Source: Lepidodermella squamata (taxonomy: Eukaryota > Animalia > Gastrotricha). From it: a stretch of 64,000 nucleotides of DNA. Of this stretch, positions 8,786 through 41,072 are shown piece after piece (positions within the stretch are counted from its first letter, which is position 1; every line of letters begins with the position of its first letter). Position numbers and translations under genes: made by a program. The DNA is taken from the NCBI GenBank assembly GCA_047495785.1, contig JBLDXI010000029.1:2294001-2358000 (forward strand). Direction: 5' to 3'. The notes under the pieces were generated by a model. That model was not told the origin of the DNA. It made no database searches and saw nothing but the letters and a program-made list of their open reading frames with translations.

Positions 8786-9096
8786 TAATAAAGTACGTAA
8801 AGAGCTTAGTAAACGCTATGGGACGGTGGAATAATTTAGCGAACACGAAAAAACAGTCATCGCGTCGCGCTGAAATTACTGTTTAGCTCTGGCCAGTGTA
8901 TCAATATTTTACTTCAATGGACCATTCGGACTTGTGCCGTGCACTGTGTTTGTTGTGAAAGAATAGGCCGTAAAACCGCTGACCTGGAACGAGTGAAGTC
9001 CCAACTTGTGCTTTGTCCCGCGGCTCGTGTTATAAACAATAACACCGTGCAAACACAGTTCCGCGTATTTAATCTTTTTCAGGATTAAGTAAGAAG

Positions 9097-12687: not shown

Positions 12688-14216
12688 CATTTTTGTCATT
12701 ATAAATAACCCGAGGCATTCAATAAAACATGGTCATCGTTTTATATAATCGATTTTGAGCGGGTTTATTTGACTGGCGAAGACGTCTATAACACGCGTCG
12801 TTTTATCTCTTATAACGAATGCTAAAAGCCACGCCAAGCTAAGTAAACAAAAGTGCGGTCTACAACAACCGAAAACAACAAACGTCTATAGTGATATATA
12901 TCACGGCCAGATAGCAATAAATGTATAATGCTGTGTTTTTGGCCCATGCTCGTTTCTTTTATACCTGTGCCAGTGGCCGAAAGCTATGAATGGTACAGCT
13001 GTGCGAATGAGCCTTCGTGGTAATATTACTGCTTTTCGTAGTAGTGGGCCGTGTGTAATAATCGGAGTGCTTCACTATGCTGACGTATAAAAAGAGTTGT
13101 GGCTACGTGATATCAGTTGTAATAAAAATGGCCGATATGGACTAACGACCTATTTCTTCATGATTTCGCACTTCCTTATAGCAATTTCTTGCCGCACTGT
13201 TCGTGCATAAATTATTCAATAGCCGGTGGTGATTTTTTTTTTGAAAATTCTGCTGACTTTTTCTTTTACATTGTACGGCAATTTGTTTTAGGAGTCAGCA
13301 TTTTTATGCATTTTCTCTACACACATAAATTCGCACGTGCCAGTTGATTTATACGCGATAGCAAAAAAACTCACAGCAATCTGAGAGCAGAGGAAAATGG
13401 CAAAACAAAATCTTCTCGAGTTTTCCCTTCTTTATTTTTCAGGTTTTAACGTTAAATTTATCGTAGAAGTAACTCGTTTATATTATTTGACTTTTTCGGC
13501 TGGCGATTAATTACGCAGCCATACATTGCCTTTAATTACTTACAGGATTAATTGTTTACTAGAAAATCGATTGAGTCATCTATAACTGGCCTTAATATAG
13601 ATTCTTTCTTTCAATTACGAATATTAGGAATTTCGGCTGGATTTCCTCAATTACCTTTAATTAACCTCTACGATGAAAGGCTAAATCTTTTGTCGCTAAA
13701 TTAGAATGTTACAGCTAGGTACCCATTTGAATTTTAAAAAATTATTCAAAAATCACAGCTTCAATAAAATTTGTCGATTTTGTTCGCTCGATTTTGAAAT
13801 GAGAACATCAAAAATCCTTGATCTGCACTCCTGGTCTCTAGAATTTTACTGCTTTTTGCAAGCGGTGCAAGCGGAAAAATTTCACGGAGAATAAATTCGT
13901 CACGTGAAAGACTCAAAAAGTTGTTAGTTCAATTAGGTAACAGTTCGCTGTAATTTTTTTTAACACACGGTTATAACAGACCGGGCTTTTTTAATCTGCC
14001 TAAACTTTCTCATTGTTTCTAAACCTCAGCTCGAGCGTAGAAAATTATCTTTATTTTACACATAAATTATCCCGACTCGACTGACGAAACTTTTTGCCTT
14101 TTAACCTGGAATTTTTTTTATCGGTTTCCAGTTACTAAATTGAAGCTTAATTTTTCCGCATCGATTTTGCCTGTATTTTCCATAATTTTCAATAGATAAA
14201 TGTGAATCCTTAAAAA

Positions 14217-15804
14217 ATGACAGTTTCGTACAGCGAGGATGTGGCTTATGCCACGCCATTCAGATTCGTTCGACTGCTATTTCGCTGGCATGGTTCGGTT
14301 TACAAGCTCATCGTCTACGAATTCAGTATTTATTTCGCTGTTTACATGGTAAATAAATATTTAAAAATTATCACCGGCTGATTTTTCGGGAATTTTTCTT
14401 AATTAGATGATGAATATCGTGCATTCTTTCATCCTGACCCCGGAACAAGAAGAGCTGTTCTCCAACGTCTGCGCTCAGTTGGGTCGAATGTCCGGCTACG
14501 TTGTTGCTTCTCTAGTCTTTTGCCTCGGTTTCTTCATCCAACAAGTTTGGCGGCGATTTTGCTTTCATTTCAACGTTGTCCCATGGCCGGATGGCTTCGC
14601 TTTCCTCGTATCAGTCAACGTCCGAGGCCACGATATGCACGGCAGACTGCTGAGACGGACAATGGCAAGTAAATTTGACAAATTAAATGATTTATTTTAT
14701 TTTAAGGTAATTCTAGGTCCGATATGCTGTTGCTTCAATCATTCTTACCTGGATGAACTTCTCAGAACGGATGAAGGTTCTCTTTCCGAATCTGGATGCC
14801 CTAGTCATGGCTGGATTTCTAACCGAAAACGAGGCTCAAATGCTGACAACTGTTGCGAGACCTCCTTGGAGGTTAGTTTCATTCCCAAAAGTTCGGTGGA
14901 TTTTTTTCAATTTCCGGAATTTAGGCAAATGGTGGCAGCATCCTGGTGTGCCGCAGTAGTGAAGCGAGCCAGAATGGAAAATCGAATCGAAGATGATTTT
15001 GCTTACAACGCAATCATCCGAGAATTAGACACCATACGTATGAGGTGTCGCCGGTAGGTCCTCACCTAATTATCCGCGCTTCTCTGTTAACAATTTGATC
15101 TTTACAGCTTGATTTCTCAGAACAATCGACCTACTCCACTAGCTCATCTTCACATTGTCATTATCGGCGTGTATTCGTTCTTCTCGATCGCGGCTGTTGC
15201 GGGTAGTCACCGCCTTCAAACTCAGAATATCCATCTAGAACTGATTGGCGATGAAGCCGGCGATATCTGGATGCTTCGCCTGTTGTCCCAAGTCATCACC
15301 ATGCTTCAGTTTTCGATTTGCGCCGGAGTTCTGGCGATTAGTCGCGCGCTAATCATGCCGTTTGGGAAGGACGATTGCAATATTGATGTCGAAGAGATTG
15401 TCAAGCGGCACTTGTCTGTTGCTTATCTGATCGTTGACGAGTTGCATTCGCTGATTCCGGAACTTGAGGACGCTCCCGATGCTGATATTGACAACTCCGA
15501 TATTGCTGACGAACCCTTCGAAATGCCTTTCATCAGGGTTTTTATTTGTCGAATGACAATTTTCTTTATACTCATGAATTCGATTTTTCAGAGACGTCTG
15601 AGCCGACGCCATAGCAAGATGTCAAACGAAGGCAGGCAGCACGAGAAGTTGGGCTTTCTCTTGTCGGTTGCTCCGAAGAAGGATAAGGGTTCAACATCGG
15701 AATCGAGCAGCCAGCCGGATGTTACTGCGGCTCGGGATCGTTTCCTAAAAGAACGAAGTGAATCGAAACTTGAACGACTGATGGACTTCCGAAAACTGAA
15801 CTAA
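14217..15804 (+). CDS. Bestrophin-family channel, copy 7
   Basis: MTVSYSED..., RWHGSVYK, VPWPD, MPFGKDDCNID. Ends MDFRKLN*. Closest to copy 6. Includes a GC-AG intron (14665-14716). Confidence 0.9.
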
Positions 15805-20716: not shown

Positions 20717-23700
20717 CTATTCAATCTCCCATTTCGGTGTTTCCGGACCTTGGAAGGTGTCTGAAAAAATTGAAAAATTGAAATTAATTAAATATCTCAA
20801 ATCAAATAAATGTCGAACTTACTTGGCAAACACCAGCCTAATAAAACATATCGCGAACTCTTCTTAATCATTAACTGCCATGTTAACACAGGGAAGGGTT
20901 GCTTCAGGACAACAGGCGATGGCTAGGGGGGGAAAATTGATAACAATTCGAAAATTAAAAATTTCGAAAATAATTACCTCGAAATTGATGAAGACGAAGC
21001 TGGGCAGTTTCAGGTAGAAATCGAATTTGAAGAACATGTCGTCGTTGCCGTGATACAGATAGAAACAGCCCGATGGTACCGACATTTGCGTGTCCAGGTA
21101 ATAATTCAGGTACAGCGTCGCCAATGAACCGAGACCGAAGAACTAAAAAAATTGGAAAAATTAAACAAATCGAAGAATTTTAATTTTAGGCTTTAAAATA
21201 AAGTTCATGCCATTTTTGAATTTCATATCTAATTAATGTTCAATTTAGATTTAGATTTTTTAAATTTCAAATTTCAAATTCAATTAAATTTAAAAGAATT
21301 TATAATTAAATTCAAGGCAAATTTGGAATAAATTATTCTAAGACTTACGTCATTTTCCAGTTCCGCATAAGCATCGGCTTCGACGATAGTAATCGGCCTG
21401 AATCGAATTCCCATGGCGCCATCGGGACCACAGAACGACGGCCACAGGGTCAAATTGAAGCGAATATCAAAATCAGCATTCATCAGAAAGGCGAATCCGC
21501 CGAAGTTCACACGAAACGCCGGCGTTGTGTACTGCCAACCGTACGTCCAATCATTGATAGTCAAATTACACGCGTATTGAACCTCGTGGAGGTAGACGTT
21601 GGACAAAGCTCGGAGTAACACGTGGCCCTGGAACCCCTTCTGAGTCTGCTCGCGCAGAAATTGAACGACAGCGATTTCCATTTGAACAATCAAGCGAACA
21701 CCCATCCAGGCGCGGCCGAATAGCTTCGACTCGCCACGGTCGTTGCGTCCGGCGAAGAAGCCAGCCTTCAACCCACCGCTGAGTAGCGTGGCTTTGAATT
21801 CGGCCCGGAATAAACAGTGCCGCTTCTGCGCACTGAAATGATTCGCGTCATTGTCGAATTCGATGGGATTTTCGTAGATTTCCGTGTAATTAACCCCGAC
21901 GACACTGTTCCAATTATCGCAGTCGACCTCAGGCGTGAAAACGAACCCGGATAACCCGCCGGCTAGACCGCCACCCAACCCGGCTAGCGGGTTAGCCCCC
22001 GCCGCCATATCGTCACGCCTTTTCCGGACCAAGCCATGCGTGAAGGCTAGAGAGGTCGCGTTCAACTGCGGGGCCGGTTCTTCCAGCTCAGTCTCGTCGA
22101 TGCCATTCCCGCGTTCCTGGAGATAAGTCAACAGGTAGCTATACCACTCCCTTCCCTTTTTCTTAACCAGGTACCGCGCGATCGGTTGCTTGTTACACGC
22201 GAACGCCCCGGTGAAACCCGGCGCCTCCAGCCATTCGGTTAGGATGAAGCCGTCGACCTCTGGCACGGTGCCAAATCGCGGCCACTGCCTCGCCGCGCCG
22301 CCCTTCGACCCCGCCAGTTCAACGGCGACAACCAGCGCATCGACGAGGCCGCCTCGCATCGAACACGGCGTGTCGGGCGCGCGCAACGCCTCGGCCACAG
22401 CCGAACGCACCGACGCGGAACCGAGGCAATTACGCAGCGAATTCAACGCCTCAACCGACAACTCGCTGGTCCGGCAATTTTTCACGATTTTCGTCAAAAT
22501 CTCCAGTAGCTTCACCGCCGGTCCGCCGAGTTGTTCGACTCGTTCCAGGTTCAAAAAATTCGCGATCGACTCGAGGAAGATTTTGTAGACGTCCTTCGAA
22601 GCCGGGCACGTGACTAGAGGCTCAATCATGTGTTGAAACCACTCAATCACTCGAATTTTCGTCTCATTCGAAATCTGGTCGGTGTCTTTTGAAATTAAAC
22701 TGCTAATAGCGAGCGATAAATGGTGTTCGGTTATCGACATCGAGTCGCTGGACGGCAGCATAGCCAGCATGGCGCTGACCAGCCGGTCGGTCGGGTATTC
22801 CAGCTGAATCATGATGTTGAGAAATTGCGGCCGGAAGCTCGATTCCATCAAATCGGTGTCGTTCAGTAAATTCGCGAATAAATTGTCGATTTCAAAGCCG
22901 TAACCGCTTGATAAGATGTAGAGCATTTTCAGGGTGACATCCCACTGCTGGGACGCGGCGCTGTCGTGCAGTTTCGCGGTTACTAAAGGCAAGATTTTTC
23001 GGAGTAGCGGCTGGTCTTGCCGCTTTTCGGATAGAATGTGCATTTTCGATTCGAGGCCGATTATGCTGCGGAGCAGGTTGGCTTCTTTCATGGCGGTGTG
23101 AGGCGAAAGAGCTACGGCGTCGACCAGGCCGGGAATGCCACCGTCCCGTTTCGCGATTTGGTCCAACTTCTTGGTCAGGATTTTCGATATCAAATCGGCT
23201 GGAACAGAAAAAAAATCAATCAAATTTATACTGAGATCAAGAAAATAAATCCGAAGGTCAACATTCAATTACGAGGAATTTTTGGAAATTTCTGGAGCCC
23301 CAGCCTAATGACTAAGGAAGAGTAAATTTTCAGATATTTCAACAATTTTTCAAGACTCGAAAATTTCTTGTTCGATCTCGAAATTTTCAATTTTTGCTTC
23401 TAAAATTTCAGATATCGGAAAAATCACTAAGATTTTAGATATCGGAAAAATCACTGATTTGTACAATCGATATCGGAAATCAATAATTTCGGAAATTCGC
23501 TCAAAATCAAAATTTGCCGGACGTTCTATTCTCCATTTCTAATGGATTTTTGAGAATACTTACAATTGTCGTACTCCTGGCTGGTAAAGTTGACACTGCT
23601 CAATCTGGCATACTCCTTGCTGACCTCCACCACTTCCTTATCGGTACCAACAGGTGTCGGCTCCGAAGTCATCGCCAAGGTGTAAGTGACTTCAACGCTG

Positions 23701-25055
23701 AATGGCAAATTTCGCGTTGTCGACTGCTTTTCCATATCAGGTGACGCCTAAAATTAACAATTCAATACTAAAAAAATTTCAAGAGAATCCTCTCACCTCA
23801 ATCGGGTAAGTCGCGACTCGCCCGCTGACAGCCTCCATTAGCCAATTCGTCGACCGAACACGTTGGTACTGGTTGACGAAAATTTCCAGCTTTTCAGCAT
23901 TCAAAGAGTCGAGTTGCAGGCGGATAAAATCGTCGGGCGTCACGGTTTTGTGGATGATCAGCGAATCGCTGTTCGGCGCGTTCTTGTAAGCGTACTCCGA
24001 GTGGTGAGTACCGAGATCGTCCGTCTCCACTACGGTACCAGCCAAACGATCGCGACTCGTTTGAAACAGCAAAACTATCGACTTCTTCAAATTCGATATT
24101 TCAGACTTCGAATCTATAAAATTGTCAACAAAAAATTAAATCGAAGTTTTAAAAATTCAAAAATTAAATTTCTAATTTTTTTTAAATTAACTTTAATTTA
24201 ATTTAAAAATTCCAGGTCAATAAAATTCATAAAAAATCAATTTTCTAAAATTTGAATGAAATTAAATATAAAAAATTCTAAAAAAAACGAAAAAAATAAA
24301 AATTTACCATGGTCCTGTTTTTTGATGAAAATTTCATGCACAGTTCCATTGAGATACTGCGCAAATTTGACAGGCCATGACGGCATTTCGTACCAGATGT
24401 TGTCCTTGGCAGCGGCGCCCGGGTGCCGATGTTCGGTCGTATCAACAACCTGTATCACCGGCGTGTTGGTTGTTGTCGTCGTCGTTGTGGAGACAGTCAC
24501 CGATTCGGCGACAATTTTCTCCTCGGACGACGTGGCCTGAAAGCCACGCGGCATTTTCTTCTTCCGCTTTGTCGCTTTCTCACTGCCCTCGCCAGTTTTC
24601 CTAGAATTTAAATTGCCATAAAAATCAGCAAATTTCTGGGCAAAATCACGAACTTATTTGACTCCTTGATTTTCGTGGCTATCCTCGAAAACGAAATCGT
24701 GTAATAAGAAATTCCGGTATCGGCGTCTAATAAATTCAATAAATTTTGAAAATTGATCCAAAATTCTGGACTTACCGAACCGATCGCAGGTGAGTTTAAA
24801 ATGCGCGGTGAAATGCATAGACTTGGTAATATTCGTGAAGCCGCCTATCACACTGTTGTAAGAATACTCTGTGGCTAGGTGCTATTGGAAACAAGTCTTG
24901 AATTTATTTTGAAAAATTGACCGAATTGTTACCTTGTCATTGCATACGGTTTGTTGATGTAACCGTAGCTGGGAGTCGAGCTTGGTCGGTAAAGCCGCGA
25001 CGATGGCCGGCGATAAAATAAATAAAACAAGGCTAACAAGCCGGTTGATTGTCAT
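20717..25055 (-). CDS. Secreted vitellogenin/large lipid transfer protein-like protein, paralog A
   Basis: Signal peptide MTINRLVSLVLFILSPAIVAA. LKKSIVLLFQ...ETDDLGTHHSEY resembles the Vitellogenin_N motif NIKRGI.SL.Q...E.D..G.C...Y. Helical middle region, RKRR site, C-terminal GCFYLYHGNDDM. Last exon ends PKWEIE*. Confidence 0.75.
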
Positions 25056-25653
25056 CTGCTGGCTGCCGAAAGCGATCGGGGTCGTAAATTGATTAATAAA
25101 TCGCGAGGTACAAAATAACAAGGTTAAAAAAACTGTTGTCGTGTTGTTATCGCCTGGTATCTTGCTGTTCTACTGCATAATGTGTATGTTGTATCAGTGT
25201 TGATGTTTCAAAATGGTTACAAATTCATTCATTTCAGCGTGTGTGTAAAAGCTTGAAACGCGGTTACGTAAGCTGCTAGCGCACTTGACTGGCACGCGCG
25301 CACTCGGTCGTGTCCAAGAGCGCCGCACGCGCCCTCTCAAAGCGAACATTTTCGCCCCCTTAACGCGAACATTTTTCAGTGTGCTCCACTAATCTGACTT
25401 GTTGAACATGAGAAATGCTAACGCTGCCGAACAGGATTAAGCCCGATTAAGGCGGCGGATGCAACCTGGTACCAACCGTTAACCCGGTATGCTATAAAAA
25501 CCAAAATGTCTCTGCCCCACATTTTTTCGAAAAATCACACAATTTAAATTATTTTAGGTGGATTTTTTTAAATTTCAAGGCGCAATATTTTTTACTTTAT
25601 TTTCATAGTAAATTTCATTCAATACCAATATGATTTTTTTTACAATATTTACA

Positions 25654-28600
25654 TCAATCGAATTCGTCATCGTCCATGCCATTTCCAACATTCCAACCCG
25701 GCGTATCGGGCTTTGCACTTGTGCCTGAAGAAATATTTACTAAATTTACTAAAAAAAGCTTTCGAAAATCTTACTCGGGAAGCAGAATCCGTAAATAACA
25801 TATCTGGCCGCTTTTTTGAAAACAATTTGCCACGTCACAAGAGCGTACGATTGCTTCAAAACAACAGGGATAGGCTATAGGTCAAAAGTTGGCATAATAA
25901 TGAGGTCAAAAATTGAAATTTGACCTACATCAAAGTTGATGAATGCGAAACTGGGTAATTTCAGGTAGAAATCGAGCTTGAAGTACATGCGATCGTTGCC
26001 ATGGTAGAAGTAGAAACAGCCCGATGGCATGACAGTCATCATATCGACGTAGTAATTGACATACATTGTCGCTAAAACACCAACTCCGAAATACTAAAAA
26101 AAAATAATTAAAATTTGAAAAAAATGAATAAAAATTATGAGCATACATCATTTTCCAACTCGGCATAAGCATCGGCGTTGAAAGCAGCGTACGGCTGAAA
26201 TCGAACGCCCATCGAGCCGTCGGGGCCGCAGAATGACGGCCAAAAGGTCAAGTTGACGCCGACATCGAAATCAGCGTTCATAATGAACGCGAAGCCTGAA
26301 AACACGATGCGAAATGCTGGCAATGTCGTGCCTATGCCGTACTGCCACTCCTCCTTCGTCCGGTTGCACGTGTACTGAATTTCGTTGATGTAATTTGTGT
26401 TGATAACGTCGAGTTTCACCTCGCCGCTGAACGCGCCTTTGAGTTGTTCGCGCGAGAATGAAATTGAGGCGATTTCGATGGCGAGTACCAACTGGGCACC
26501 GAGCCAAGTTTTGCCGTACAGACGGCCGTCACTTGCATTGCTTTGGCCTGAGAAAAATCCGGCTTTGAAACCAGCCGAACCCAATGTTCCGAAAGCGAAC
26601 GATGCACTATAAGAAAAACAGTGGAATATAAAAAATAATGACAATGAAATAAATCAAAATAAATTATTTAATTATTTAAATTAAATTAAAATATCTGAAG
26701 TCTAATAATTTCGCTCAAAAGGGATAACGCCAGATTTTTTGTGTCAAGGCGCTAAATTTTTTACACTGGGACATCAAATTTAGGGATGCATAATTTTTCA
26801 AAAAAATTTCAATTTCAATGTTTTCAACATTTTTGAAAATTTTCATTTTTTTCAAATTGATTCCAGTCCTGAAAATGCGAGGCCCATTTAAAATAAAATG
26901 AATTTTACTTGAATAGGCAGTGTTTTTTCTTCATGCCGAATATCAAGCCATCACGGTCGAATTGAGCAGCCAAGTTGTAGACACCAGGCGCAAAATACCG
27001 GCCAATATCCGAGTCCCATCGCTGGCAGTTCAACTCGGGCGTAAATTTCGGAGTCAACCCCCCAGCCCCGCCACCGCCAGTTAGGGCACTAAGGGCGCCA
27101 AGCTGCCGCTTCACGCGTCTTTGCTGGCGTTGTTCAGGATGTTCAGGGTCCGATTGCAGAAGGTTGCGAAGGCCGAGTTTCAGGTCTGCTTTTGATTTCA
27201 GCTCGAAGAATTCGCGCAATAAACCGGGTTTACACGAAAAATCGCCGCTCAGGTTGTCGTCACCGCCGTCTTTCAAGGTCCGGTTCAACGAGTTCCATAG
27301 ATAGGCGTCAAGTACTGTGAAATTATGCTTAGGCCACGTTCGTCTTGGCTTTATCATACCAGCTGAAAAAGGAAGATATATACATTTAATTGAAATTTTC
27401 AAATATTCCGAAACATATTCCGAAAAAAATCGGCCGGGCACAACTTTCCCAAAAATAAATTTTTTATTACCACGCCTAACCAAGCCACATCTCAGCGTTA
27501 CGTGTATGTTGCGTTATTGATGGGCAGTTTAAGAGTACCTAATACTTCAGTTTGCTGGCCGATATCGATTTCAATTATCGATTTTAGAAATCAGTGATTT
27601 TTCCGATATTAGAGCGTGACCCATACGCTGCGCAACCATTAGGCAATTTCGAACATTTTTCAAGGAAATTGAACTAATTTTTTGAGGTTAAGCCCACCGA
27701 GTTACCCTGGAACCTTTATCCACGGTTTTACCGAAGAAATTAAAAATGTAACTGGGAAAAATTTGAAAATCGTGATGGTAACTGGTTCGGAAATTTTCCG
27801 TTTTTACCTGAATCGAATTTCTTCGGAATTTTTTAATCCCATTCGCAAGAGATAGATAAGGTGTTTGATTACTATTTTTATGGCATTTTAGATTTTTCTA
27901 AGATTTTTCTAAAATTAAATATCCCTGGGTCGTAGCGCGCATTTCATACCAAGAAAGGAATAGTTCGAAATATCAAAAAATCGGGAAACCTAATTTAAGG
28001 AGCAGAAATAAAATAATAGAAATAGAAATAGAATAATAAAATAATAGAGCTCAGCTACTAGTGAATCTATTTCATCCGAGAAATTATAAGGAAATCAGGA
28101 AATTTTCCGAAAAAAATGAAGGGAAAAGTACCATCGCTTTGTCGCAGTCCGGTTTCAGGTAACGAAACCAATTGCTGAAGCAATTCACTCCTGGTATAGC
28201 AGCTGCTTTGCCTCATCACGACCAGCAACCCATTTTGAACCTGATCATCCTCCAAAACATGCCGCAAGGTGAGTAAAGACTCCGTCGCCAACTCCGGGTT
28301 CCAGCCATGGCAAGATCCAACAAGTTTCAGCACCACTCGAATCAGGCGACGTAGCACGTTTTCAGCCCTATTCAACATAGTTGGGACTATCACATTAGCC
28401 GCAGCGTCCAAAACAGCCCGGCGTTGTTCGGCCGGAGCTTGGCAATCGCGAATAAACGGTTCCAACTTAGCGATGAAAATGTTAATAACCACCCGATGAA
28501 CCCGACTGGTCGCAGTTTCTTTCGAAACCAGCAAGCTCAGATCCGTTAAAACGTGCATGTTCATAGCATTGGTCCAAGCTATTGGCCAGCTGTCTGTCCT

Positions 28601-30564
28601 GGTAATCAGGCTGGTCAGTTTCAGTATCAAGCCATCGCTTGGGTACTGGTACTGGGCGATTGCGTTCAGAAAATGCTGCGTGTACTTGTAAGATCTCAAT
28701 AGCTCGCCCGTGCTGAGAATATCTAGAAAAATCTTACCGTAAAAATAGCCAGCTTAATTTTCGAAATTTTGAAACAATAAATCGAAAACTGACCTTGTCA
28801 ATATCGTCGTGTTTACAGCCAGCTGCTAGTTCGAGTAATCGAACTGTGACTTTCCATTTTTTCATTTTCCTCGCCGTTTCAATGTTCTATTTAAGGTTCA
28901 AGGTGATTAAAAAATTGAAAGAGTAATCGAAACTAACCTTTTTCAAAACTGAGAACAATTCCGGTAGTAAATTTATTCGGTCCAATTTTCCAAGTACCAT
29001 GAGTCGCGATTCAAGATTCAGCAAGCTTTTCACTTTCCCAACTGTAAAATTATTGAAATTTTAAAATGACCAAGAAAAGAAGGATTTTTTCTACCATAAT
29101 CTGATGGTTTATCCGGATCATCCCATAGGTTTTTGAAGACCAAGCCCAGAGGTAATTTTCGAACATTTTCCAACTTTTTGTAATAAATTGTGAGCAAATT
29201 TTTGTTGTTGTCGAACTGCTGGCTGGTGTAATTTTCTCGGGTGTATCGAACAAAGTCGGTATCGTTCCAAATTGAACTATCCAGCGACTGAGATTCGCCA
29301 TTATTTTTCATCGAATACGTCACCACAACACCAAGAGGAAGTTGGTCATTCTAGTAAAAAAGATAAATTATTACTAAAATTAAAAAAAAATATGATTACC
29401 TTGGCAACGGGCTGAGTTGATATGTGACCATCTGTTTCAGTCACCCTGCCGTCTTTTTCATCGATAATCAGATTTTGAGTGGCGTACAAATTGATTTGAC
29501 TGAAGTTGATCGTATCAAACTGAAGCTTGACAAAATCCTCCGGGTAAACGCTCTTCGTCACCATTAAATTGCCATTACGATAACTTTCGAAGCTGTGAAC
29601 ATGATTAAAATTCATATAGGATGAGTTGAAATTTTTCGGAAAATTTACTGACGTGTAATGCGAAAAATGCTGGCCGAGATCGTCATCTTCAAAAGTTTCC
29701 GTTTCGAATTCGTGGGAGTCATCAAATATTTCCGCATTTCGATTTATTTGAAATGTAAAGACGATTCCTTTCTTAATGTTCTGATCTTCGCTATGCCGAT
29801 CTAAAAATAATTTCGAGAATAAAAGCTGAAACAAATGATAAAAGATTCAGCTACCATGATCTGATTTGTGGACGAATACATCGGTAATAGTTCCGTTGTA
29901 GTATTGGTAAAATCGAATCGGTTTCCGGGACAAATCGAACCATTTATCCTCATTAGGATCGTGCGGTCTGGAACCTATTGTCTTACTAGTCTGGAATCCA
30001 AAAACAATAATTACTTACTCAATTTTCAATAAGAATGTAAAAAGCTCACAGTTGTAGATCCTATCGCTTTGAACGAATTTACAGGGATTTTCCGATGCCG
30101 AGATTTTGAACTGTTAAATTCGTAAGATTCGGAAATTGAACTTAAAAGGTTCAGTCACCTTACTTTGAAACCGAGGCGTTACTTTTCATTTTTGTAGATA
30201 GGGTTAAAAAATTTATCACAAATTCATATCGACCGATGCTGGGTTCTGAAGAATAGTTGATATTAATAGATTAAAGAAAATATTGAAAATTCCAACCATA
30301 ATTTACACAGGTCAGCTCGAATCGCGAGGTAAAAACGATGTATTTAGTCGCATTGGCGAATCCAACTATTTTGCTATTGTAATCGTATAAAAGTGACGTC
30401 CGATTGAGATCCTGCAAGGAAAAATAATTAGATGTCGATCTATTGTCCCATTTTTTTTCATTTACCTGGCATAGGGCTTGAGAAAAATGAGCCAAAGTTC
30501 TGGCGCCTATTTGATCGATAAGGGTGATCAGTGCCAACACGACTCCCTTTTCCAATAAACCCAT
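25654..30564 (-). CDS. Secreted vitellogenin/LLTP-like protein, paralog B
   Basis: Signal-like MGLLEKGVVLALITLI. NIKKGIVFTFQ...EDDDLGQHFSHY, RVKR site, GCFYFYHGNDRM. Last exon ends DDDEFD*. Confidence 0.75.
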
Positions 30565-32044
30565 CCGTATCAAGATCGAGAAATTATGGGCTATGTATCT
30601 TCACAGGATGTCCCTTTGCTTTGGTGACATTTTTCGGCAAGAACAAAACGGCAGAAAAGTAAACAGATTTTCTGAAAATTAATTAAAATACAAATATTGC
30701 TGTAGTATAAGTTGGAAAACAAGCATTATTAAACAATAGGTTTGATGATGTTCGCAAATTATTAATTTTATTTAGAAAAATGATGAGAACTTTTTGATTA
30801 TACAAGTAAAACCGGCGCGGAATGCCGGAACAAAGGGCTAGCGGTGAATTAAGAGAAGCGACGGCGGCGACGCCAAATTGTCTGCGCACGCGCAAAGCGA
30901 CGCACTTGAATTACCTTGGCAAGTATATAATCGCATTACTTCACTCATCATAATGCGGCAAAATTATGAAAAAATTAATTACCCTGTGATTTATAAGATC
31001 AAAATTATAGATATAAATTTAGCGATGATGCGAATTAATTGATGGCAAAAATCAGGGTGGGGATAGCAAAGAGAATAAAAAGTGAAAATGTGACCTGAAA
31101 TAACTTAAAACTAGGTCATGATAACATTTTATGCATTTTTTCTTGTAACATTTCAAAATTTCATCGGAGATAAACTCATTAATTCTTTTTTTTCAGGGAA
31201 ATTTGAGAGGAATTCTTGGAAAATTAGTTCTGATTTTCTTTTTAAAAAATCATGTGTAAAGTGATTGAACCATTTTGGAGAATTTTGATACCGAAAAATT
31301 TGTAAAAAAAAATCCGCCTTAATTTATTTTGTGTAAATTCCTGTTCCGAAAATCAGAAATAATTTTTGTTGTCACGCTTGATTGATTTTTTCACGCTCTG
31401 CCCTATTGGAACAACTCCAAGACCAAAGGCCTGGAATGAGCCTCAGGCTAAAGAAATTCACGCGCTCAAGGCGGGAGATAAGAGATGCCGGCGCGCGTTA
31501 AAGCATAAAAACTAAAACAATAGCGCATCTCATTTCAGCGACCAAGAGCAGGTATCAGCAAGCGCGCATCCGCGCACTCAAGTTCCAAGGCCGGCAAAAT
31601 AATGATACATGAGGCCCTCGAAACAATAATTACCTGCCGAGAGTGTTGTCTCCACTCTGCGGCTTCAAGTACATGTAAATAATAATAATAATAATAATAA
31701 TGAAAATTTAGCTAAAACCGACGCCAAACGCCTGTTGTGACCTGAACATCCGCTTCGAGTTAATTGCTACCTGGCCTAGCTTTAACGAAGCGCGATGCGA
31801 CCAGTACTAAACGCTTGGTGTCTGCATAGTCGTGTTATCTCTTATCAGCTGGCTTTTGCCTCTCGCGTAAAAATGTAATGTACAAAATACTCCGCCGAAA
31901 CGAGAAAAATTCTGCGACGATTAACAATTTGTTCAACACGACAACAAAAATTTAATTGTCAAACGCCTCATGAGCACACCAGTATTTTGTCATCGCGAAC
32001 AAATTATTTCGGCAAATGTTGTGAAATTTTTATAACAATATAAT

Positions 32045-35000
32045 ATGACGGTGATATTTTTCTTGTTGTTGACAATCTGCCTACCGTTCGTGGCGCCTAT
32101 AAGTCCTTGCAACCCTTACGAGCCTGGTCCGATCAGCCATCAATACATCTTCGACAGCTCAGTAGCGGCTTTTACAAACTCGATCGCTAAATCAATTTTT
32201 TTCACGGCAAATTTTTCGTTACAGTGCGATGAATTCGGTAGGCGGAAATTTTAAATTTTTCTCACTGAAAATTCAATTTTTTTCAATAGATCCGAATAAC
32301 CGATTGTACCAATATTCTTTGATTATTCACAAAATATCGACAAAACTTCAGTCGACGGATAAAAGGAAGAAAACTGCGGCGCCAAGCCGGAGGCGCAAAA
32401 TTCCGGCTCCTTTTAAGGTGGCAGCATCGCTGAACCCAATAACGAATAAGTTCAAAATCGAGAATTATCAAACTCGACACCGGCGGGCTGCTGAACAGGA
32501 AAATGTTTGGTATGACCTGGTGCCACAGCAGAGCAATAACTCGGTCCAAGTTCGATTCGACCGGCTGTTCAACGGCTCGATCATCCGGATGAAAATTCCT
32601 AGCGATTTGAGTGAAGTTACGGTTGGAATTTTGAAAACGCTGGTCCTACTATTCAACATCAACCGAAACATGACGTCGACTTTACTGCTCGAAAACGACG
32701 ATTTGGGCCAGCATTACTCGAAATTTTCATTCCAACGTTACCACAATGGCGATTCGAGGTTTTTAATCGCTGAAAAAATCGTCGAGCCGGATGATTTTAA
32801 CAAAAATCAGTACGAAAGCGTGAATACGGGTAAAATTGCGGTGAAGCAGCGGCAAATTCAGGTGATAAACTACGACACGATGCTGCTGTACAATTCTTCG
32901 GGCAAAATTTCGACAACGTCAGCGACTGATTTTCAGAATTTAAACACCAGCTCGACTGAAGATAAACGAATTCCGAATGTTATCTTCCAAGTTGAAGTTG
33001 GGTATTACTTGAAACTCGACCGAACTCTGCCGAGATTTTACGATAGGGTCCAGAAGAAACCTGAGCAAGTGTTCGATTTTTCCAACTTCGCCCCTCAACA
33101 TTTCGACGATTGTGAGTTTGAAATTTAAAATTTGAGTCCTCCTTAATTTTTTGTTTAATAGCTAAAGAATTGGAGAAGATTTTGCATATCAAGCAGGATT
33201 TATTGAAAACCAACGCGAATTGGCAGGATGTTATGCAAATAGCTGTTGGCGAGGTTCGATCAGGTCAGGATAAGGAATCGAATCTGCTTCGAGGGGCCTT
33301 GGTCCTAGAATCGACCCTCTACTTGAGATCGAAACGTCAAAATAAGCCGATTTTAAACGAAATTCTACCGATTGCCACAAAAATTCTAGTCGAAAGTCTG
33401 GACAGCAACAATTTCGATGCTGTTTTTCGCGTTTTGTACATACTATCCGGAGCTCATGGTGATGAAATTAACAAGGTGACTGGATTTTTTTAGAAAAATC
33501 AATGTTAAGGCGGATTTTTTTAATTTTTTAATTTTTAATTTTAATTTTAATTTTAATTTTAATTTCAAATTTCAAATTTCAAATTTTAATTTCAATTTCA
33601 ATTTTTTTAGATTTTTCTCGGATGTTTTTCCCTGAGATCTATCACTGAAAATGAGGCAAATCGGCGTAATTTTTTCAACACGCTTGGCCAGCTGCAATTC
33701 CCGTCCGATTTGTTACTCAACCGGTTATTTGCCGAGTTCGAACAATTGAGCCTTAAATCTGTCTTCCGAATGACTGATAAAGAAGCGAATGCGACGCGGC
33801 GGTGTTACCACGCTATGCTCAGCGCGGGTACTTTGCTGTCCCGGCAAACCATTTCCGACCAAATGCGGGATAGAATAATCCGATGGTTCACGAACAAAAT
33901 CACTCAGACCTTCACAGCTCACCATCGCTGCCGCGGTCTTCACGACGCTAAATTTTACTACGAACCAATTTTCGACTCAATCGCAAATTTCATGACGCCA
34001 GAAGTTGTGGGTAAGCATCCGCAACTCGTCAATTCATCCCTGGTTTGGCATTTGCTAGAGATCGCGGAGATTTGCTACGACCGCGTTGAGCCGGAATTTG
34101 CGCTGACAGTTCTACAAACCCTGCGAAAATTGTACCACTTCGCGCCAATTTCTGAGTCGATTTCGCATTTGATTGCCGTAAAATCAACGTCCTGCGAACA
34201 GCGGGCTGATTTGTTGAATGAGCTTCGAAATAGGATCAACGACGATGATCGAATGCGGCTGCAGCGAATGTGGCCGCGTTATGGCGTAGTCACCGTGCTG
34301 GATTCCTACGTTACCCAGCAGTTTTTGTCGATTTTAGACGGGAAAGGCAGTTCGTTCGATTGTAACAGGGGTGTTTTGGTTGACTATTTGAAGGGGAAGC
34401 GAGGTCGAGCTTGGGATGAGTTATTCGAAGGCATCGCCGAGAAGCACTATAGGAGGAGGAATTTTCGAGACAATTCAACAGCTGAAAATGAGGCCTTAAT
34501 CCGAAATCGGCGGCAGCTCGGAGGTTTAGGAAGCCTTCTCGGTGGTGGAGGAGGTCTTACTGGAGGTAAGTAAATTCAAAAAATTTAAAATTTATTTAAA
34601 ATTTAAAATGTAGAGAATTTAAAGAATTTAATTCAATTTTTTTAAATTTTAAAATTTGATTCAACATTTTAGATGTTGAGAATTTTGTAATTAATTTTAT
34701 TTAGCAGATTTAAAAATTCAAAATTTAATTGTAAAGCGAAAGCAAAAATTTGAAAGCAAAAAATTTCAAACACAATTTTTTCATGTCAGGCGGCGGCGGT
34801 GGAGGAGGAAGCGGTTTCACCCCGAATACGATAGTCGAATGTGACAAGTGGGACTCGACCGTGGGAAGAAATTACCGTAACGTCTATTCGAATCCTACGC
34901 TATACGATTACGACAGCTTGACTTACGGATCTACGAAACGCCATTGTATTTTCGATTTGTCAATCAAATTTTCCACCCTCGCTACGATCGGCATCGAAGC

Positions 35001-35953
35001 TGGGTTCTTCTCCGGTAGAAATGCTACAACGCGTATGGGCCGATTATTCGGCAAAGCCTGGTCAGGGTGAGTCAACATTTCAATTTCAAAATTGTTTGGA
35101 TTTATTTTGAAATTTTTGAAATAGGTTGTCGTTTTTACTTTCTCCCCAAGAATTTGCCGTGCTCGAATTTAGCCGTTACATGCATCCACGTGGCTTCAAT
35201 GGCGGCGTGAAGCTGTCAGCTTTTGGCACAGTTTACATGGATGAAAAACAAGATCACTGTAACATGACCTTCCGCATCAGTTTCCGGCCGTTGCAATGGA
35301 CCCTGCCAGCTTTTCGAGTTACCTTCGGCGGGTTCACGTTTTTAATGACTGCTGATTTCGCCCTCACTTTGAACATGACCCTGAACCCTTCTTACTGTGG
35401 GGCTGATGGCGAGATGGGTCTTCGATTCTTACCCGCTGTTGTAGCCGAGGCAACAGCATATGCCGAACTTGAAAATGACGTAAATTTTCGCCAAAAAATA
35501 ATCATTCCCTCGAAAATAATAATTTTTCCGCTCAAGTTTTTTGGCATGGGAATGCAGGCAGCTGTAAACATCAACTACTACTTCGACTTTCAAGCCTCAG
35601 TACCCAGCGGATGTCTGTACATTTTCCACGGAAATGATGACATGTTCATGAAATTCGACTTCTACATAAAATTGCCGAGTTTCGTCTTCACGAACACAAA
35701 CGTAATTTTTACGAGATTTTTACCTATCTATGTCTATATTTTTCCTGATTATAGGTCAAATCGATAACAATACGGCAACCATGGCCAATATTTACGTGGC
35801 AATTAATTATTAAAAAGTCTGGCCGATATGTCTTATATGGATTCTGCATGCCTGGTAAGTTCATTTAACGCTTTGGAAGGTTTTTTTTAATTATATTTTG
35901 AAATCACAGCAACTGTCATCCCACCCGAAGCCGTTCCTTACTACAACACCTGA
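32045..35953 (+). CDS. Secreted vitellogenin/LLTP-like protein, paralog C
   Basis: Signal peptide MTVIFFLLLTICLPFVA. GILKTLVLLFN...ENDDLGQHYSKF, RNRR site, GCLYIFHGNDDM. About nine exons, ending VPYYNT*. Confidence 0.75.
33522..33606. repeat. (TTTTAA/TTTCAA)n hexamer microsatellite in an intron
   Basis: Visible tandem hexamers. Confidence 0.8.
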
Positions 35954-36263
35954 AAATTATGCAGTTTTTAAATTTCAGATAAATAATTTGAGAATAAAAA
36001 GAAGAAATGTTGCTACAACAATGTTTTACTCGAATAATTCAAAGAACTGAAAAGTAAGAGATAGCAGGTAAAGTATTTAAGCTGTAACAGGGCTCATTTT
36101 GATCAATAAAATTTTATACAAAAAAAATAAAAAGCACTACAACAGTAATTTTCTATATACAATATTTTACAAAACGGCCAGAAAAAAGTCTTTAGAAAAA
36201 TCACAGAAAGCAATTTCAGCTTTTATGGAACAATGTTATAGCCTGAATCTCGAAAAATCTCGT

Positions 36264-39200
36264 TTAGCCTTGGCTCGCATCGAATGTCCAGGATGGAGTA
36301 TCGGGACCGGAGAAAAAGTCTGCAAAATTTTTCAAAAATTTAAATAAAATTCAGTTTTTTCTGCCAAAATATTTACTTGGCGGGCACCAGCCGAACAGCG
36401 CCCATTTGCCGCCCGCTTTTGCAATCAAATCCCATTGAAATACGTTCCACACAATCAGTGAGGTTGCTGGATTAGGCTATTTAAAAAAATTGATAAAAAA
36501 TTATCATTTTTTTTAAATAAATTCGCTCACATTGATGTTTGTAAATTTGAATGTTGGCAATTTAAGGTAGATTGAAATCGAAAATTGCATGTCGTCATTG
36601 CCGTGGTAGAGCCGAATGCAGCCGTCGGGCGCTCGTAGTGACAACTCGAGGAAATAATCGAAAAATAACTGCGCATTTATGCCGACTCCGAAGTAAGAAT
36701 TCGCGATTTCCGCAAACGCATTGCCAGCCAAAACACCGACAGGTTTGAACATAATGCCGATGTCGCCTTGTAAACAATAGCTAGGCCATAAGTACAGGGT
36801 TACTCGAGCTTCGAGATCTGCGTTCATGTTGAGGGAAAAGCCGCCGAATGAGACGGTGTACACTGGCAGGGCGAATTGGTAGGCGTAGGACCATTGATCG
36901 ATTGTAATATTGCACGTGTATTGAGGCAAGTCCCTAAAAAATAGAACAGAAATATGTGAAAATTACGTTAAAAATAAAATAAAATAAAATAAAATTGAGG
37001 TTCCAGCTCTGAGTTCAAGCTCCAAGCTCCAAGTTTTTTGCGATTACGAATTTTCCCAATATCAAAAATTCCACCATTTTCCCCGATTTCGGGTCTCGAT
37101 CGGAAAATTGAGAATTATTTCAAAATTTTCAATTATTTGGTTTCGGTTTAGGGAACGAAGAGATATGAGGTGGGGTAAGGTCTTCAAAAATTAAAATGTT
37201 AATTTCTGAATTTTAAATAATTTTGAATTCAATAATTAATTTCGATTTTCATATATCGATATCGAAAATTGATGGAAATCGATACTCAAAATCGATATCG
37301 ACTGTTCTGGTAGATTTTTAGCCAATGTCAACAATTTTCTGTAGATCCCATACTTTTGGAGTTTGGCCTAGTTTCAATCAGCCCAAATTATCTAGATCTT
37401 TAGTCCAATTTATAGACCGAACTTACATGTAAGTGAAACCAATAGCCGATAGACGCGTGTAACCATAGAAACCGCTTTGACTCTGCTCACGATTGAACGC
37501 AACATCCAACAAGCTGATAACAAGCCCAAGTTGAACATTGACAACCAGCCGGCCGAACAGCTTGCAAATACCCGTCTCAGCAGTTTTACCCGTGAAAAAC
37601 CCGGCTCGAACATAGGCCGCAAAATAATTCGTCCCGCCAGTTACATCAAACAAAATATGCCGCCGGACGTTGTACAACGATTTATCAGTTTGAAATTGAG
37701 ACGGCGCTTGAATAACGACAAACATGCCGTTGTAGTCTTGCCAGTCGTTCGTGTAAATATTGTACGAATAGCCGTCACCACTCGCCCGTTTTTCCCGGTC
37801 CAATAGCTCGGTAGAATTGCTAGTATCAATCGTAATCACCTTATCGTCCTCCGAATTTGAAATCGCCAATTTTTTCGTGGTAATCGTAACCGGGGTTGTT
37901 CGAACCATTCCGAAGCTTCGTTGAAATTGAACCGAACCATATGGCATTTTCTTCCTCGCGAAGTAATCTTCAAAGGTCGCGCGGTCACAGGACAATTTTT
38001 CAGGCTGGAACATGAGTAGAGCCGCGAAGTGGCGGTCGATTTCATTCACGCCCCTCGCCGGCCAAACCTTGATGTCAAACTGCATTGTTTTCATCAACTG
38101 GCCGATCAGCAGCGATTTTTGGTGGCAATCAGCCCGGGTTAGATAGGCTAGGATCGATTTCATAGCTATAGGCGATGTATGCAGCTTACTAACCGCGGCC
38201 AGGGCTGTTAGGGCGATGTCGTCGATTTCATGACACATTTTCGCGATATCAATGACTTGGTTGATCAATTTCGAGGCTAATGGCCCGATTTGGTTGACAA
38301 CCTGCGGGCTCAGGAAGTTGCCCATAGCACTTAGACTCAGCATAGCTGGGGTTCCGAGTTGGCAGGTTTCGTTTGCGAATCTATCGCTGACGACTTTGTA
38401 GAGATATTCGGCGACTGTGATTTTTGTTTGGTTGGTTACGGTGTTGCGGGAGCCGGTTGAGCCGATGGCGAGTAGCAGGTGGTTTCGGAATTCGAGTTCG
38501 TCATCGTCGAACACTTCGCCGGCTCGGTGTTGGTAGATCATTTGCGTGACTATGAAATCGGATGGGTGGGACATGAAAATTGCCATATTCATCAGTTGCA
38601 CTCGGTACATGTTCGGCAGCTGGTCGTTTTGAAGATAGCTGAGGAGAACCTATGAAAATTTAAAAATAAATGTTTTATTTGACTAAAGGTTGATAGGGAT
38701 AGATTCCAAAATTTAAAAAAAATTCTTAGAATTTTCATTTGTTTGTTATCCTGTCTAATCGCGCTGAACCTTTAGTTCACACGATCAATATCGATTCCAA
38801 GTATCGATTTTACAAATCAGTGATTTTTTCGATATTAGCAATCTTTGAAACCAACATTGAAACTGTTCCTAGCGAGCTGATGGTACTAGGTACCAGGTAG
38901 CTAAATGGAAAACCCCAAGGTCATGGAAGGCATCAGTAATGACCAATATAAGAAGAAGCTGAAATCGCAAGGAATGGGGACCTTACCTTTTGTGGTTCGA
39001 ATCTTCAGATATAACGTGAATTGCCAAAAACTCTACATTTCTAAAAGACTTCAATTTCCAGATATTTAAGCTGGCATGAAAAAAGGTTCCATGGCTTCGA
39101 CGAAGTTCCATGAAAATTTTACAGAAATTCATAGGAAAAGTGGAAATTTGGCCCCACTGAAAAATTGTATTAAAAACTGGACCTTTAGCAGATTTATGAA

Positions 39201-41072
39201 TTCATTCCTTTATCAATCCTTTAAATTTTAAATTTTTAGCCCACCTTATCGGCATAATGGCCAGATGCTGAAACGGCAAGGTTCAGGAAAGACAGACAAA
39301 GAGACCAGCTCTGCATTGACTCGCACTTGATCAATTGCTGCAAAAATTAAGGTGGAAATTTTCACCTCAAGTTTTACAAGAAACCAACTTTTTTAATCGC
39401 AGGCATCGCCATATCGTAAACCTTTCTCGCCTTCATTTTACCAGCGTGATATAGCTCAGCTTCCAGCTGTAAGGCTCGCCGTAAAGGTTTCACTGGGAAA
39501 ATTAATCGAAAATTAATAAAATTCCAAATTTTCAAGGTCAAATTTACGAATGTCTTGATTTTGAGGCGATTCGCTGAATTCATCCAGAATCGTCTCAATG
39601 CCCTTGCCGTACAAGGCCGGTTCAACTTTCGCGAAAACCTCGGCAATATGGGCTGTTGGGTCGTCGTTACTGCTCAAAACTTCAGCCGGTTTCTCCGCAC
39701 TCTCCCAATCCATACCAGTCACACTTCGCAACATATGAAGCACAGCGGGTAAATTACCGGCTAATCGGGTTGTTAGTGCTAAATTGAACCGAGCTTCAAC
39801 CGCAACTTGAGCTTTCACGTCCTCATCAACGGAGTACACCTGGGTAGGGTGCGTCGTAGTCGCGAGCTCTACGCTGATATTTCCCGAATATTGGCGCAGA
39901 TTTCCGTCGTTCGAAAAATTTTGCCGTTCAGTGACGAGGACATTCAACATGCCAGCGTTGACCTCATCGCGTTGCATTTGGATGAAATCGTCGCTAGTCA
40001 GGCGTTTCGTGACTATTAGACCACCGGCGATTGGCGTGTCGTATTTGTAGGTGGTGTAATGATAGCCGAGTTCGTCGTATTCGGCTACGGATCGCAGCGT
40101 GGTGAATGTTGCGTCTGTTTCCACGGGATAGGCGGTTTGGAAGGCGAAAACAATGGCTCGTTTTATGCTGACCAGCTTGCTTTGCTCTAAAAAATGAAAA
40201 GATGGAATTAAATAAAAAATCACAAAAAATATACCGTAACTTTGAGAAAATCAAATTGTTTTAAGTTAAAATTCATCCAATCAACTTGAGACGGAGGCAT
40301 AAAAATATGCATAAAAATTCCATTTTTCTGGTGTTCAACCCCGAGGAGTCGATATCCTTAGATGTTCAAGGTTACCCTATCCCTTAGAAGCCTCGATGTC
40401 GAGGGCGAATCAAAACTGTGCAAATCTTGCGGTCAGAAAATCTAATTCTAAAACGCTATAGAATTTGTTTAGCTAAATTCGACCATTTATTCTGTGTTTA
40501 TTCACCTGCGGTAGCATCCATTTTGTTGAAAGTGATGGTAGAAATTGAGCCGTTGTTCAGCCGATCGAACATGACCGGGCCTTTCGGCAGCGGGAACCAG
40601 TGGCCAATCGTAGAATTCGCATCCTCATCCATTTTATACGTATCATCAACCGCCATTTTCAGCGATTCCTTCGTCGGATTCTCAGGATCCTCCGCACGCA
40701 CCATATTCGGCGGCAACTTCCGCCGCCGCGTCTGTTGCGTTGGTTTACGCACATAGTCTGATATACTGGTTTCGAGGCTGTCAAACCACAGGGCGTAACG
40801 TGTTTTCGTGGGCGAGGATGAGTCGATGCCGCGGCAGAGCAGGTACACCTGGGCTCGGTAGTTGATCACCTTCGACGCATTACTCGCTGATATGAGACTG
40901 CTTTGAAAGCTATATTTTAGCGCCTCCTTAATAAAAAATTATATTGAAAGTAGGAAGTGAATTTGTTGGCCTGGCTGACCTTTGAGCAGGCATTTTGAAC
41001 GATGGTTTTCGACGAAACGTAAGAAAACAGGGTACAGACAGCGACAATACACGGCAGAGTGTGGTGTATCAT
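36264..41072 (-). CDS. Secreted vitellogenin/LLTP-like protein, paralog D (most divergent)
   Basis: Signal-like MIHHTLPCIVAVCTLFSYVSS. SIKRAIVFAFQ...EYDELGYHYTTY, REKR site, GCIRLYHGNDDM. Last exon ends FDASQG*. Confidence 0.75.

What the first reader, a model, noticed from the sequence alone, without database searches (positions are those of the whole stretch)
21930..37800. Furin site followed by a fusion-peptide-like Gly-rich hydrophobic segment
Seen at the same position in each paralog: RKRR|DDMAAGANPLAGLGGGLAGGLSGFVF (A, ~22026), RVKR|QLGALSALTGGGGAGGL (B, ~27118), RNRR|QLGGLGSLLGGGGGLTGG (C, 34502) and REKR|ASGDG (D, no hydrophobic peptide). Known: apolipophorin II/I is furin-cleaved after its helical domain, and a Gly-rich apolar neo-N-terminus released by furin characterises class I viral fusogens. 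Inference (speculative): cleavage exposes a membrane- or lipid-inserting peptide, making a protease-activated membrane-active or polymerising system with D as a non-inserting partner.
Basis: partly seen in the sequence, partly recalled or inferred. Interest (0 to 1): 0.7.

Follow-up and report, generated by a model that had tools for sequence, protein, structure and literature searches.

The report
Convertase site in lipid-carrier paralogs
Four neighbouring genes encode divergent relatives of yolk and blood lipid-carrier proteins that keep an ancient furin-type cutting site between two domains, and the glycine-rich stretch after it looks like a recent flexible linker, not a virus-like membrane-inserting peptide.

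Summary
All four paralogs have R-x-[K/R]-R in one alignment column: A at 22026, B at 27117, C at 34502, D at 37797. A Gly-rich stretch follows in A, B and C but not in D.

[quoted passage not shown] The evidence is fold matches to MTP, lipovitellin, apoB and bee vitellogenin, plus Pfam Vitellogenin_N hits in distant relatives.

[quoted passage not shown] About 25 family members share it, from brachiopod, spider, scorpion, mite and priapulid. In them it sits 5-15 residues before a conserved C-x-x-W motif. This matches the known furin processing of apolipophorin-II/I and apolipocrustacein.

The 26-34-residue Gly-rich insert arose once, in the A/B/C branch.
- It is below transmembrane hydropathy.
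- It is up to 50% glycine.
- It changes by indels.
- It is acidic or proline-rich in B-like copies of related species.
- Beta strands follow it, not heptad repeats.

The fusion-peptide reading is therefore not supported. Cleavage itself is inferred, because no read data were available. Another note of this scan (s1-384481) had already called this cluster LLTP-like. Interest is modest.

The parts
20797..25055 (-). Paralog A gene. It runs from the signal-peptide exon (MTINRLVSLV...) to the last exon. The large exon 21346-23205 holds the helical domain, the site, the insert and most of the beta domain.
   Evidence: Exon pieces and paralog BLAST. Signal-peptide hydropathy 2.28. 71-73% identical ortholog P0001.
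25749..30600 (-). Paralog B gene. The 5' end is tentative.
32045..35868 (+). Paralog C gene, with signal peptide MTVIFFLLLTICLPFVAP.
36351..41050 (-). Paralog D gene. The 5' end is tentative.
   Evidence: Orthologs P0002 and P0003 are 52-75% identical.
22015..22026 (-). A: RKRR, the predicted proprotein-convertase site.
   Evidence: It is the only R-x-[KR]-R in A. The loop has pLDDT 26-44.
21922..22014 (-). A: 31-aa Gly/Ala/Leu-rich insert between the site and the conserved CDNW.
   Evidence: 26 of 34 columns are identical to the ortholog, with 4 gap columns.
27106..27117 (-). B: RVKR site.
27028..27105 (-). B: 26-aa Gly-rich insert before CQRW.
   Evidence: Only 9 of 31-33 columns are shared with B-like copies of relatives, which are acidic there.
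34502..34513 (+). C: RNRR site.
34514..34565 (+). C: first part of the Gly-rich insert. It ends at a GAG|GTAAGT donor inside a Gly codon.
34790..34839 (+). C: second part of the Gly-rich insert, after a TTTTTTCATGTCAG acceptor. The Cys of CDKW follows at 34840.
37786..37797 (-). D: REKR site.
37756..37785 (-). D: short 10-aa polar spacer before YTNDW. This is the ancestral-type spacing, and both Cys of the loop are lost.

Best explanation
A-D are tandem paralogs of a divergent, secreted, MTP-sized branch of the large lipid transfer protein superfamily. [quoted passage not shown]

The R-x-[K/R]-R motif sits in an exposed, flexible loop at the border between the helical and beta-sheet domains. 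I take it to be a proprotein-convertase (furin/kexin-type) processing site that is cut in the secretory pathway. Cutting would give an N-terminal chain of roughly 75-80 kDa and a C-terminal chain of roughly 35 kDa. These would stay together as a two-chain lipid carrier, as apolipophorin-II and -I do.

The Gly-rich stretch after the site in A, B and C is a low-complexity flexible spacer. It was gained once, after the split from D. It lengthens the tether between the cut and the disulfide-braced start of the beta domain. It may make the site more accessible.

Shown here: the motif and its conservation, the LLTP fold, the loop position, the single origin and variability of the insert, and the presence of convertase genes. 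Inferred: cleavage in vivo, the chains staying together, lipid binding, and the spacer role.
For: Fold:
- The AlphaFold model of D-ortholog P0003 has mean pLDDT 74.
- Its ten best Foldseek hits are all LLTPs: MTP 6i7s at E 7e-15, then lipovitellin 1lsh, apoB100 and bee vitellogenin.
- VIA-align gives apoB100 Z 13.4 and lipovitellin Z 12.6 across all three domains.
- The best ESM Atlas cluster is MTP, TM 0.53 over 606 residues.
- Pfam Vitellogenin_N hits 4 of 38 family members, including Lingula P0009 and Uloborus P0012.

Site:
- It is aligned in all paralogs.
- R-x-[KR]-R followed within 5-15 residues by C-x-x-W occurs in homologs from Lingula, Uloborus, Centruroides, Dinothrombium, Priapulus and others.
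- It lies in a loop with pLDDT below 50, residues 612-634 of P0003, between the last helix (596-605) and the first strand (638-643).
- The equivalent MTP loop (594-610) protrudes from the surface (PMC6717300).
- Furin cleavage at RX(R/K)R near residue 720-728 is documented for apoLp-II/I and apoCr (PMC1783640).
- The genome has at least 8 loci with the convertase P domain.
- A and C have clear signal peptides.

Insert as a linker:
- It is absent from D, from D orthologs and from all distant homologs.
- The tree (D,(B,(A,C))), with supports 0.97-1.0, implies a single gain.
- B-like copies in related taxa carry acidic or Pro-rich inserts.
- Two near-identical B-like orthologs are 39/39 identical downstream but 20/27 with an indel in the insert.
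- Hydropathy is below the transmembrane level and the octanol-scale transfer energy is unfavourable.
- pLDDT is 26-44.
Against: - No direct evidence of cleavage.
- The window's own exons do not reach any Pfam LLTP model. Superfamily membership therefore rests on predicted fold and on transitive homology.
- The A insert is fairly well kept between two species (26/34). Its core has a favourable Wimley-White interfacial energy of -3.3 kcal/mol. Some lipid-surface affinity is therefore not excluded.
- The Q-L-x-G-L start after the cut recurs in the B and C lineages, which hints at some constraint.
- The C-terminal beta domain is modelled with only middling confidence (pLDDT 50-88).
Confidence: 0.65

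Rival explanations
1. Convertase cleavage frees an apolar Gly-rich new N-terminus in A, B and C that inserts into a target membrane, as a class I viral fusion peptide does. This would make a protease-armed membrane-active or polymerising system in which D is a non-inserting partner.
For: A dibasic site lies directly before a Gly/Ala/Leu-rich segment in three paralogs. The core of the A segment has Wimley-White interfacial energy of -3.3 kcal/mol and is 76% conserved in the ortholog.
Against: - Kyte-Doolittle maxima are 0.55-1.19, against 2.3-2.5 for the signal peptides. Octanol-scale insertion is unfavourable for all.
- Bulky hydrophobic residues make up only 18-29%.
- The composition is not kept: B-like copies in relatives are acidic or Pro-rich.
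- The segment is absent from D and from every distant family member, although they keep the site.
- Long beta strands of an LLTP lipid-binding domain follow it, not heptad repeats.
- There is no C-terminal membrane anchor.
- A PDB sequence search with the A insert found nothing.
Confidence: 0.07
2. A softer version. After cleavage the Gly/Leu-rich tail acts inside the lipoprotein itself. It would be a mobile lid or lipid-surface-associating tail at the mouth of the LLTP cavity, tuning lipid loading in A, B and C.
For: The tail starts at the border of the lipid-binding beta domain (PMC6717300 for the MTP layout). A shows modest interfacial affinity and conservation. A shared F-T-P-E/N-x-x-C end and a Q-L-x-G-L start recur.
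Against: The middle of the insert varies freely in length and charge between orthologs. Acidic versions in B-like copies would not favour neutral-lipid contact. The region is predicted disordered.
Confidence: 0.15
3. The dibasic motif is not cleaved. It is conserved as a basic surface patch for a receptor or for heparan sulphate.
For: No cleavage data exist for this family. LLTPs do use basic regions for receptor binding (general knowledge, not tested here).
Against: The strict R-x-[KR]-R pattern is kept across phyla while neighbouring residues vary. It sits in a flexible loop. The same type of site is cleaved by furin in apoLp-II/I (PMC1783640). The genome has many convertase genes.
Confidence: 0.1

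Closest known systems
Insect apolipophorin-II/I and decapod apolipocrustacein (apoB-type LLTPs)
   Same: LLTP fold. The RX(K/R)R site lies after the helical domain, at roughly residue 700-730 of the precursor. Furin cuts it in apoLp-II/I, and the two chains stay in one lipoprotein (PMC1783640, PMC8545670).
   Different: Those proteins have 2500-3400 residues with DUF1081 and von Willebrand D domains. The window proteins have about 1000 residues, lack those domains and are not hit by Pfam Vitellogenin_N. Exact structural equivalence of the site (between LLT motifs N19 and N20) was not established here.
Microsomal triglyceride transfer protein large subunit (MTP)
   Same: Same size and three-domain plan: beta-barrel, helical domain and two-sheet lipid-binding domain. 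It is the best structural match. The cut loop corresponds to the protruding MTP loop at the helical/C-sheet border (PMC6717300).
   Different: MTP is an ER-resident partner of PDI and is not convertase-processed. The window proteins carry a conserved dibasic site and a C-x-x-W...H-C pair. They have no ER-retention signal at the visible C-terminus and no Pfam MTP_lip_bd match.
Class I viral fusion proteins (furin-primed fusion peptide)
   Same: A dibasic cleavage site directly before a Gly/Ala-rich apolar stretch.
   Different: The stretch is far less hydrophobic, not conserved in composition, and absent in most family members. Beta sheet follows it rather than a heptad-repeat coiled coil. There is no membrane anchor. 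The protein fold is an LLTP.
Uncharacterised LLTP-like proteins of Lingula anatina (XP_013398086), Uloborus diversus (XP_054724407), Centruroides, Priapulus caudatus and Dinothrombium tinctorium
   Same: True homologs, at HMM E-values 1e-8 to 1e-23. They share the dibasic site, the C-x-x-W motif and the basic-H-C motif.
   Different: They have a short polar spacer of 5-15 aa instead of the Gly-rich insert. Some are longer, up to 1650 aa, one with a chitin-binding domain.

Membership tests
[quoted passage not shown] | Three-part LLT module fold: N-terminal beta-barrel, alpha-helical domain, C-terminal amphipathic beta sheets | tested here: met
   The model of D-ortholog P0003 matches MTP, lipovitellin, apoB100 and bee vitellogenin as the top 10 Foldseek hits (E 7e-15 to 1e-4). 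VIA gives Z 12.6-13.4 across the domains. The ESM Atlas MTP cluster matches at TM 0.53.
[quoted passage not shown] | Sequence match to Pfam Vitellogenin_N (PF01347) | tested here: inconclusive
   The window's own exons have no hit at E<=1. Homologs found with the family profile do match (P0009 at 2.8e-14, P0012 at 1.5e-11; 4 of 38 members). The link is therefore transitive only.
[quoted passage not shown] | Binds or transfers lipid | not testable with these tools
   Needs biochemistry.
apoB / apolipophorin-II/I / apolipocrustacein family | RX(K/R)R convertase site after the helical domain | tested here: met
   PMC1783640 describes the known site.
apoB / apolipophorin-II/I / apolipocrustacein family | DUF1081 central domain and C-terminal von Willebrand D domain; length above 2500 aa | tested here: not met
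   No such Pfam hits. The genes encode about 1000 aa.
MTP family | About 880-aa three-domain LLTP with a two-sheet lipid-binding domain | tested here: met
MTP family | Pfam MTP_lip_bd (PF19444) sequence match; ER-resident PDI partner, not cleaved | tested here: not met
   No Pfam hit. A conserved convertase site is present. PDI binding and ER residence are not testable here.
Class I viral-type fusion peptide | Conserved hydrophobic peptide at the new N-terminus | tested here: not met
   KD maxima 0.55-1.19 and octanol energy above 0. Composition is not conserved in the B lineage, and the peptide is absent from D and from distant homologs.
Class I viral-type fusion peptide | Heptad-repeat coiled coil after the peptide and a C-terminal membrane anchor | tested here: not met
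   Long beta strands follow. No C-terminal hydrophobic anchor is seen in the last exons.
Class I viral-type fusion peptide | Furin-type site immediately before the peptide | tested here: met
   This is at sequence level only; cleavage was not shown.

The most novel reading that the evidence does not exclude
A-D and their relatives form an undescribed fourth kind of LLTP: secreted, MTP-sized and convertase-cut into two chains, with a disulfide-braced new N-terminus. In the A/B/C branch the cut would free a Gly/Leu-rich tail that works as a protease-released lipid-contacting lid or sensor.
Probability: 0.12. Interest if true: 0.6.

Novelty: new member of a known kind. Interest (0 to 1): 0.3.

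Why it matters
The result places an orphan four-gene cluster in the lipid-carrier (LLTP) superfamily. It also shows that convertase processing at the helical/beta-domain border is shared by a small, unannotated LLTP branch found in several protostome phyla. That pushes this processing step deeper into LLTP history. It also gives a simple biochemical prediction: two chains joined at the motif. The more exciting idea, a cellular protein with a furin-armed fusion peptide, does not hold up, so the finding is of modest interest.

Tried and rejected
- Pfam scans of ten exon translations gave nothing.
- The word-index protein search found only one relative.
- The ESM Atlas feature search gave no usable hit.
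- A PDB profile search with the family alignment gave nothing significant.
- A PDB search with the A insert gave nothing.
- Tandem Repeats Finder found no DNA-level repeat in the coding inserts, so recent slippage is not shown.
- The first structure model, the A exon with 11 rows, was poor in the beta domain with pLDDT 30-50. A second model of the intron-free D-ortholog with 38 rows was used instead.
MAFFT plus FastTree was used instead.
- Pore-forming toxin, collagen-like and elastomeric readings were considered. They were dropped because the fold is LLTP and the insert is not conserved.
Full report
**Setting.** The window is eukaryotic, with short introns and TTTTCAG-type acceptors. It carries tandem bestrophin genes, 2-hydroxyacid dehydrogenases, NAD kinase and a SET-domain gene. 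Other agents' notes on this genome call it a small invertebrate, probably a gastrotrich. I did not test that. The genome is 121 Mb, and the family studied here exists only as the four copies in this window.

**Observation.** Stop-to-stop pieces and all-against-all BLAST define four paralogs.
- A is on the minus strand at about 20797-25055.
- B is on the minus strand at about 25749-30600.
- C is on the plus strand at 32045-35868.
- D is on the minus strand at about 36351-41050.

In a MAFFT alignment of the exon translations, the motifs RKRR (A), RVKR (B), RNRR (C) and REKR (D) fall in one column. So does RHRR of the only close database relative, P0001. The motif is the only R-x-[KR]-R in A, B and D, and one of two in C.

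What follows the motif differs between paralogs.
- A has a 31-residue Gly/Ala/Leu-rich stretch.
- B has 26 residues of similar kind.
- C has 34 residues with about half glycine. An intron splits this stretch inside a Gly codon, with donor GAG|GTAAGT at 34565/34566 and the next exon starting at 34790.
- D has ten polar residues.

**What the proteins are.** Pfam finds nothing in the window's exons. The word-index search found one relative, P0001, at 71% identity on an environmental contig.

A profile of the exon alignment was searched against 1.84 billion representative proteins and gave only 35 hits.
- The close hits are all from metagenome contigs. They are orthologs of A (P0001), of D (P0002, P0003), a C-like protein (P0004) and a B-like protein (P0005). 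Their contigs share neighbouring genes with the window, including NAD kinase and 2-hydroxyacid dehydrogenase.
- The distant hits are uncharacterised proteins of Lingula, Uloborus, Centruroides, Priapulus and Dinothrombium.

Four of 38 family members reach Pfam Vitellogenin_N.

P0003 is an 888-residue uninterrupted D-ortholog, 55-70% identical to D. It was modelled with a 38-row alignment, giving mean pLDDT 74 and pTM 0.66. The model has four parts.
- A beta-barrel at residues 56-213.
- A helical domain at 253-605.
- A low-confidence loop at 612-634 that holds RNKR at 628-631.
- A beta domain at 638-887.

The structural matches agree on the fold.
- The ten best Foldseek matches are all LLTPs: MTP at E 7e-15, then lipovitellin, apoB100 and honey bee vitellogenin.
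- VIA-align ranks apoB100 (Z 13.4) and lipovitellin (Z 12.6, 508 residues across all three domains) with the top helical-repeat hits.
- The best ESM Atlas cluster is MTP, at TM 0.53.

The genome also has four ordinary Vitellogenin_N loci elsewhere, so this cluster is an extra, divergent LLTP branch. Another note of this scan (s1-384481) had already called the cluster LLTP-like. My tests agree with it.

**The dibasic site is old.** R-x-[KR]-R is followed within 5-15 residues by C-x-x-W, and then by a basic-H-C motif and a G-x-F-x-G motif. This pattern is present in about 25 family members across phyla.

The two cysteines occur together in at least 22 members and are both absent in 4: the D lineage and P0035. 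My pattern scored one member, P0024, as having only one, but the regular expression missed its W-S-H-C. This pattern suggests a disulfide that braces the start of the beta domain. That is inference.

In MTP the loop at the helical/C-sheet border (594-610) protrudes from the surface (PMC6717300). The cut loop here is in the same place.

Furin cleavage at RX(R/K)R near residue 720-728 is documented for apolipophorin-II/I. A cut at the aligned dibasic site is also documented for apolipocrustacean, there attributed to subtilisin-like endoproteases (PMC1783640; see also PMC8545670). By adding exon pieces, the site in A and D lies at roughly residue 700-730.

The genome has at least eight loci with the convertase P domain. 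A and C have clear signal peptides. Those of B and D are tentative.

**The Gly-rich segment is young and loose.**
- Distant homologs and D have short polar spacers.
- A FastTree of 18 sequences gives (D,(B,(A,C))) with supports of 0.97-1.0. The clade is monophyletic against all outgroups, so the insert was gained once. I left out the window's split exons, fragments and the weakest long hits.
- Inside the A/B/C branch the ends are kept: Q-L-x-G-L in B and C, and F-T-P-E/N-x-x-C. The middle is not.
- B-like copies on contigs L001 and L016 read as acidic stretches, and P0005 is Pro/Asp-rich.
- Two nearly identical B-like orthologs are 39/39 identical downstream but 20/27 with an indel in the insert. 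Window B shares only 9 of 31-33 columns with them. The A insert is better kept, at 26/34 against 40/45 downstream.
- Hydropathy is below transmembrane level, and the octanol transfer energy is unfavourable. Only the A core has a favourable interfacial energy, -3.3 kcal/mol, mostly from its G-F-V-F end.
- Both models give the region pLDDT below 50.
- Long beta strands follow it, and no C-terminal anchor exists.

**Conclusion.** The site is best read as a conserved proprotein-convertase processing site of a divergent secreted LLTP. The Gly-rich stretch is best read as a lineage-specific flexible spacer. The fusion-peptide analogy fails three of its four defining features. A weaker role of the tail in lipid contact inside the lipoprotein cannot be excluded, most plausibly for A.

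**Limits and procedure.**
- Cleavage, secretion and lipid binding are inferred.
- No read data could be obtained.
- In one search I concatenated the two short exon ends of the C linker inside a script, for composition statistics only, and guessed the junction residue wrongly. Searches corrected this by reading the splice sites and treating the two parts separately.

Noticed in passing
window 21910-21921 (A, CDNW) and the K-R-H-C about 35 residues later; the same in B and C; lost in D (37744-37755, YTNDW): The Cys of C-x-x-W and the Cys of the basic-H-C motif are present together or absent together across 27 family members. Both were lost in the D lineage and, independently, in P0035. This suggests a disulfide loop just after the cut site.
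   Followed up: partly
up to 20 residues upstream of each site, e.g. window 22057-22065 (A, NAT) and 37816-37824 (D, NST): An N-glycosylation sequon lies within 20 residues before the dibasic motif in 11 of 27 members, including Lingula, Priapulus, A and D. A glycan might modulate cleavage.
   Followed up: partly
L012:6033-12667 and L016:3460-9713 (metagenome contigs of related species): Related taxa have a different copy pattern: two D-like genes in tandem and two B-like genes in tandem. Their flanking genes (NAD kinase, 2-hydroxyacid dehydrogenase) are the same as in the window, so the cluster is old but keeps duplicating.
   Followed up: partly
window 34566-34789: The intron of C lies inside the poly-Gly coding tract and splits a Gly codon. 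Its body is AT-rich with short A/T tandem repeats.
   Followed up: no
B and C sites (27105, 34514) and P0002-P0005: The residue right after the predicted cut is Gln in the window's B and C copies, in the B-like and C-like relatives, and in the D-like orthologs P0002/P0003 (window D itself has Ala there). The new N-terminus could therefore cyclise to pyroglutamate.
   Followed up: no
window 1449-15804: There is a tandem array of bestrophin-domain exons upstream of the cluster.
   Followed up: no
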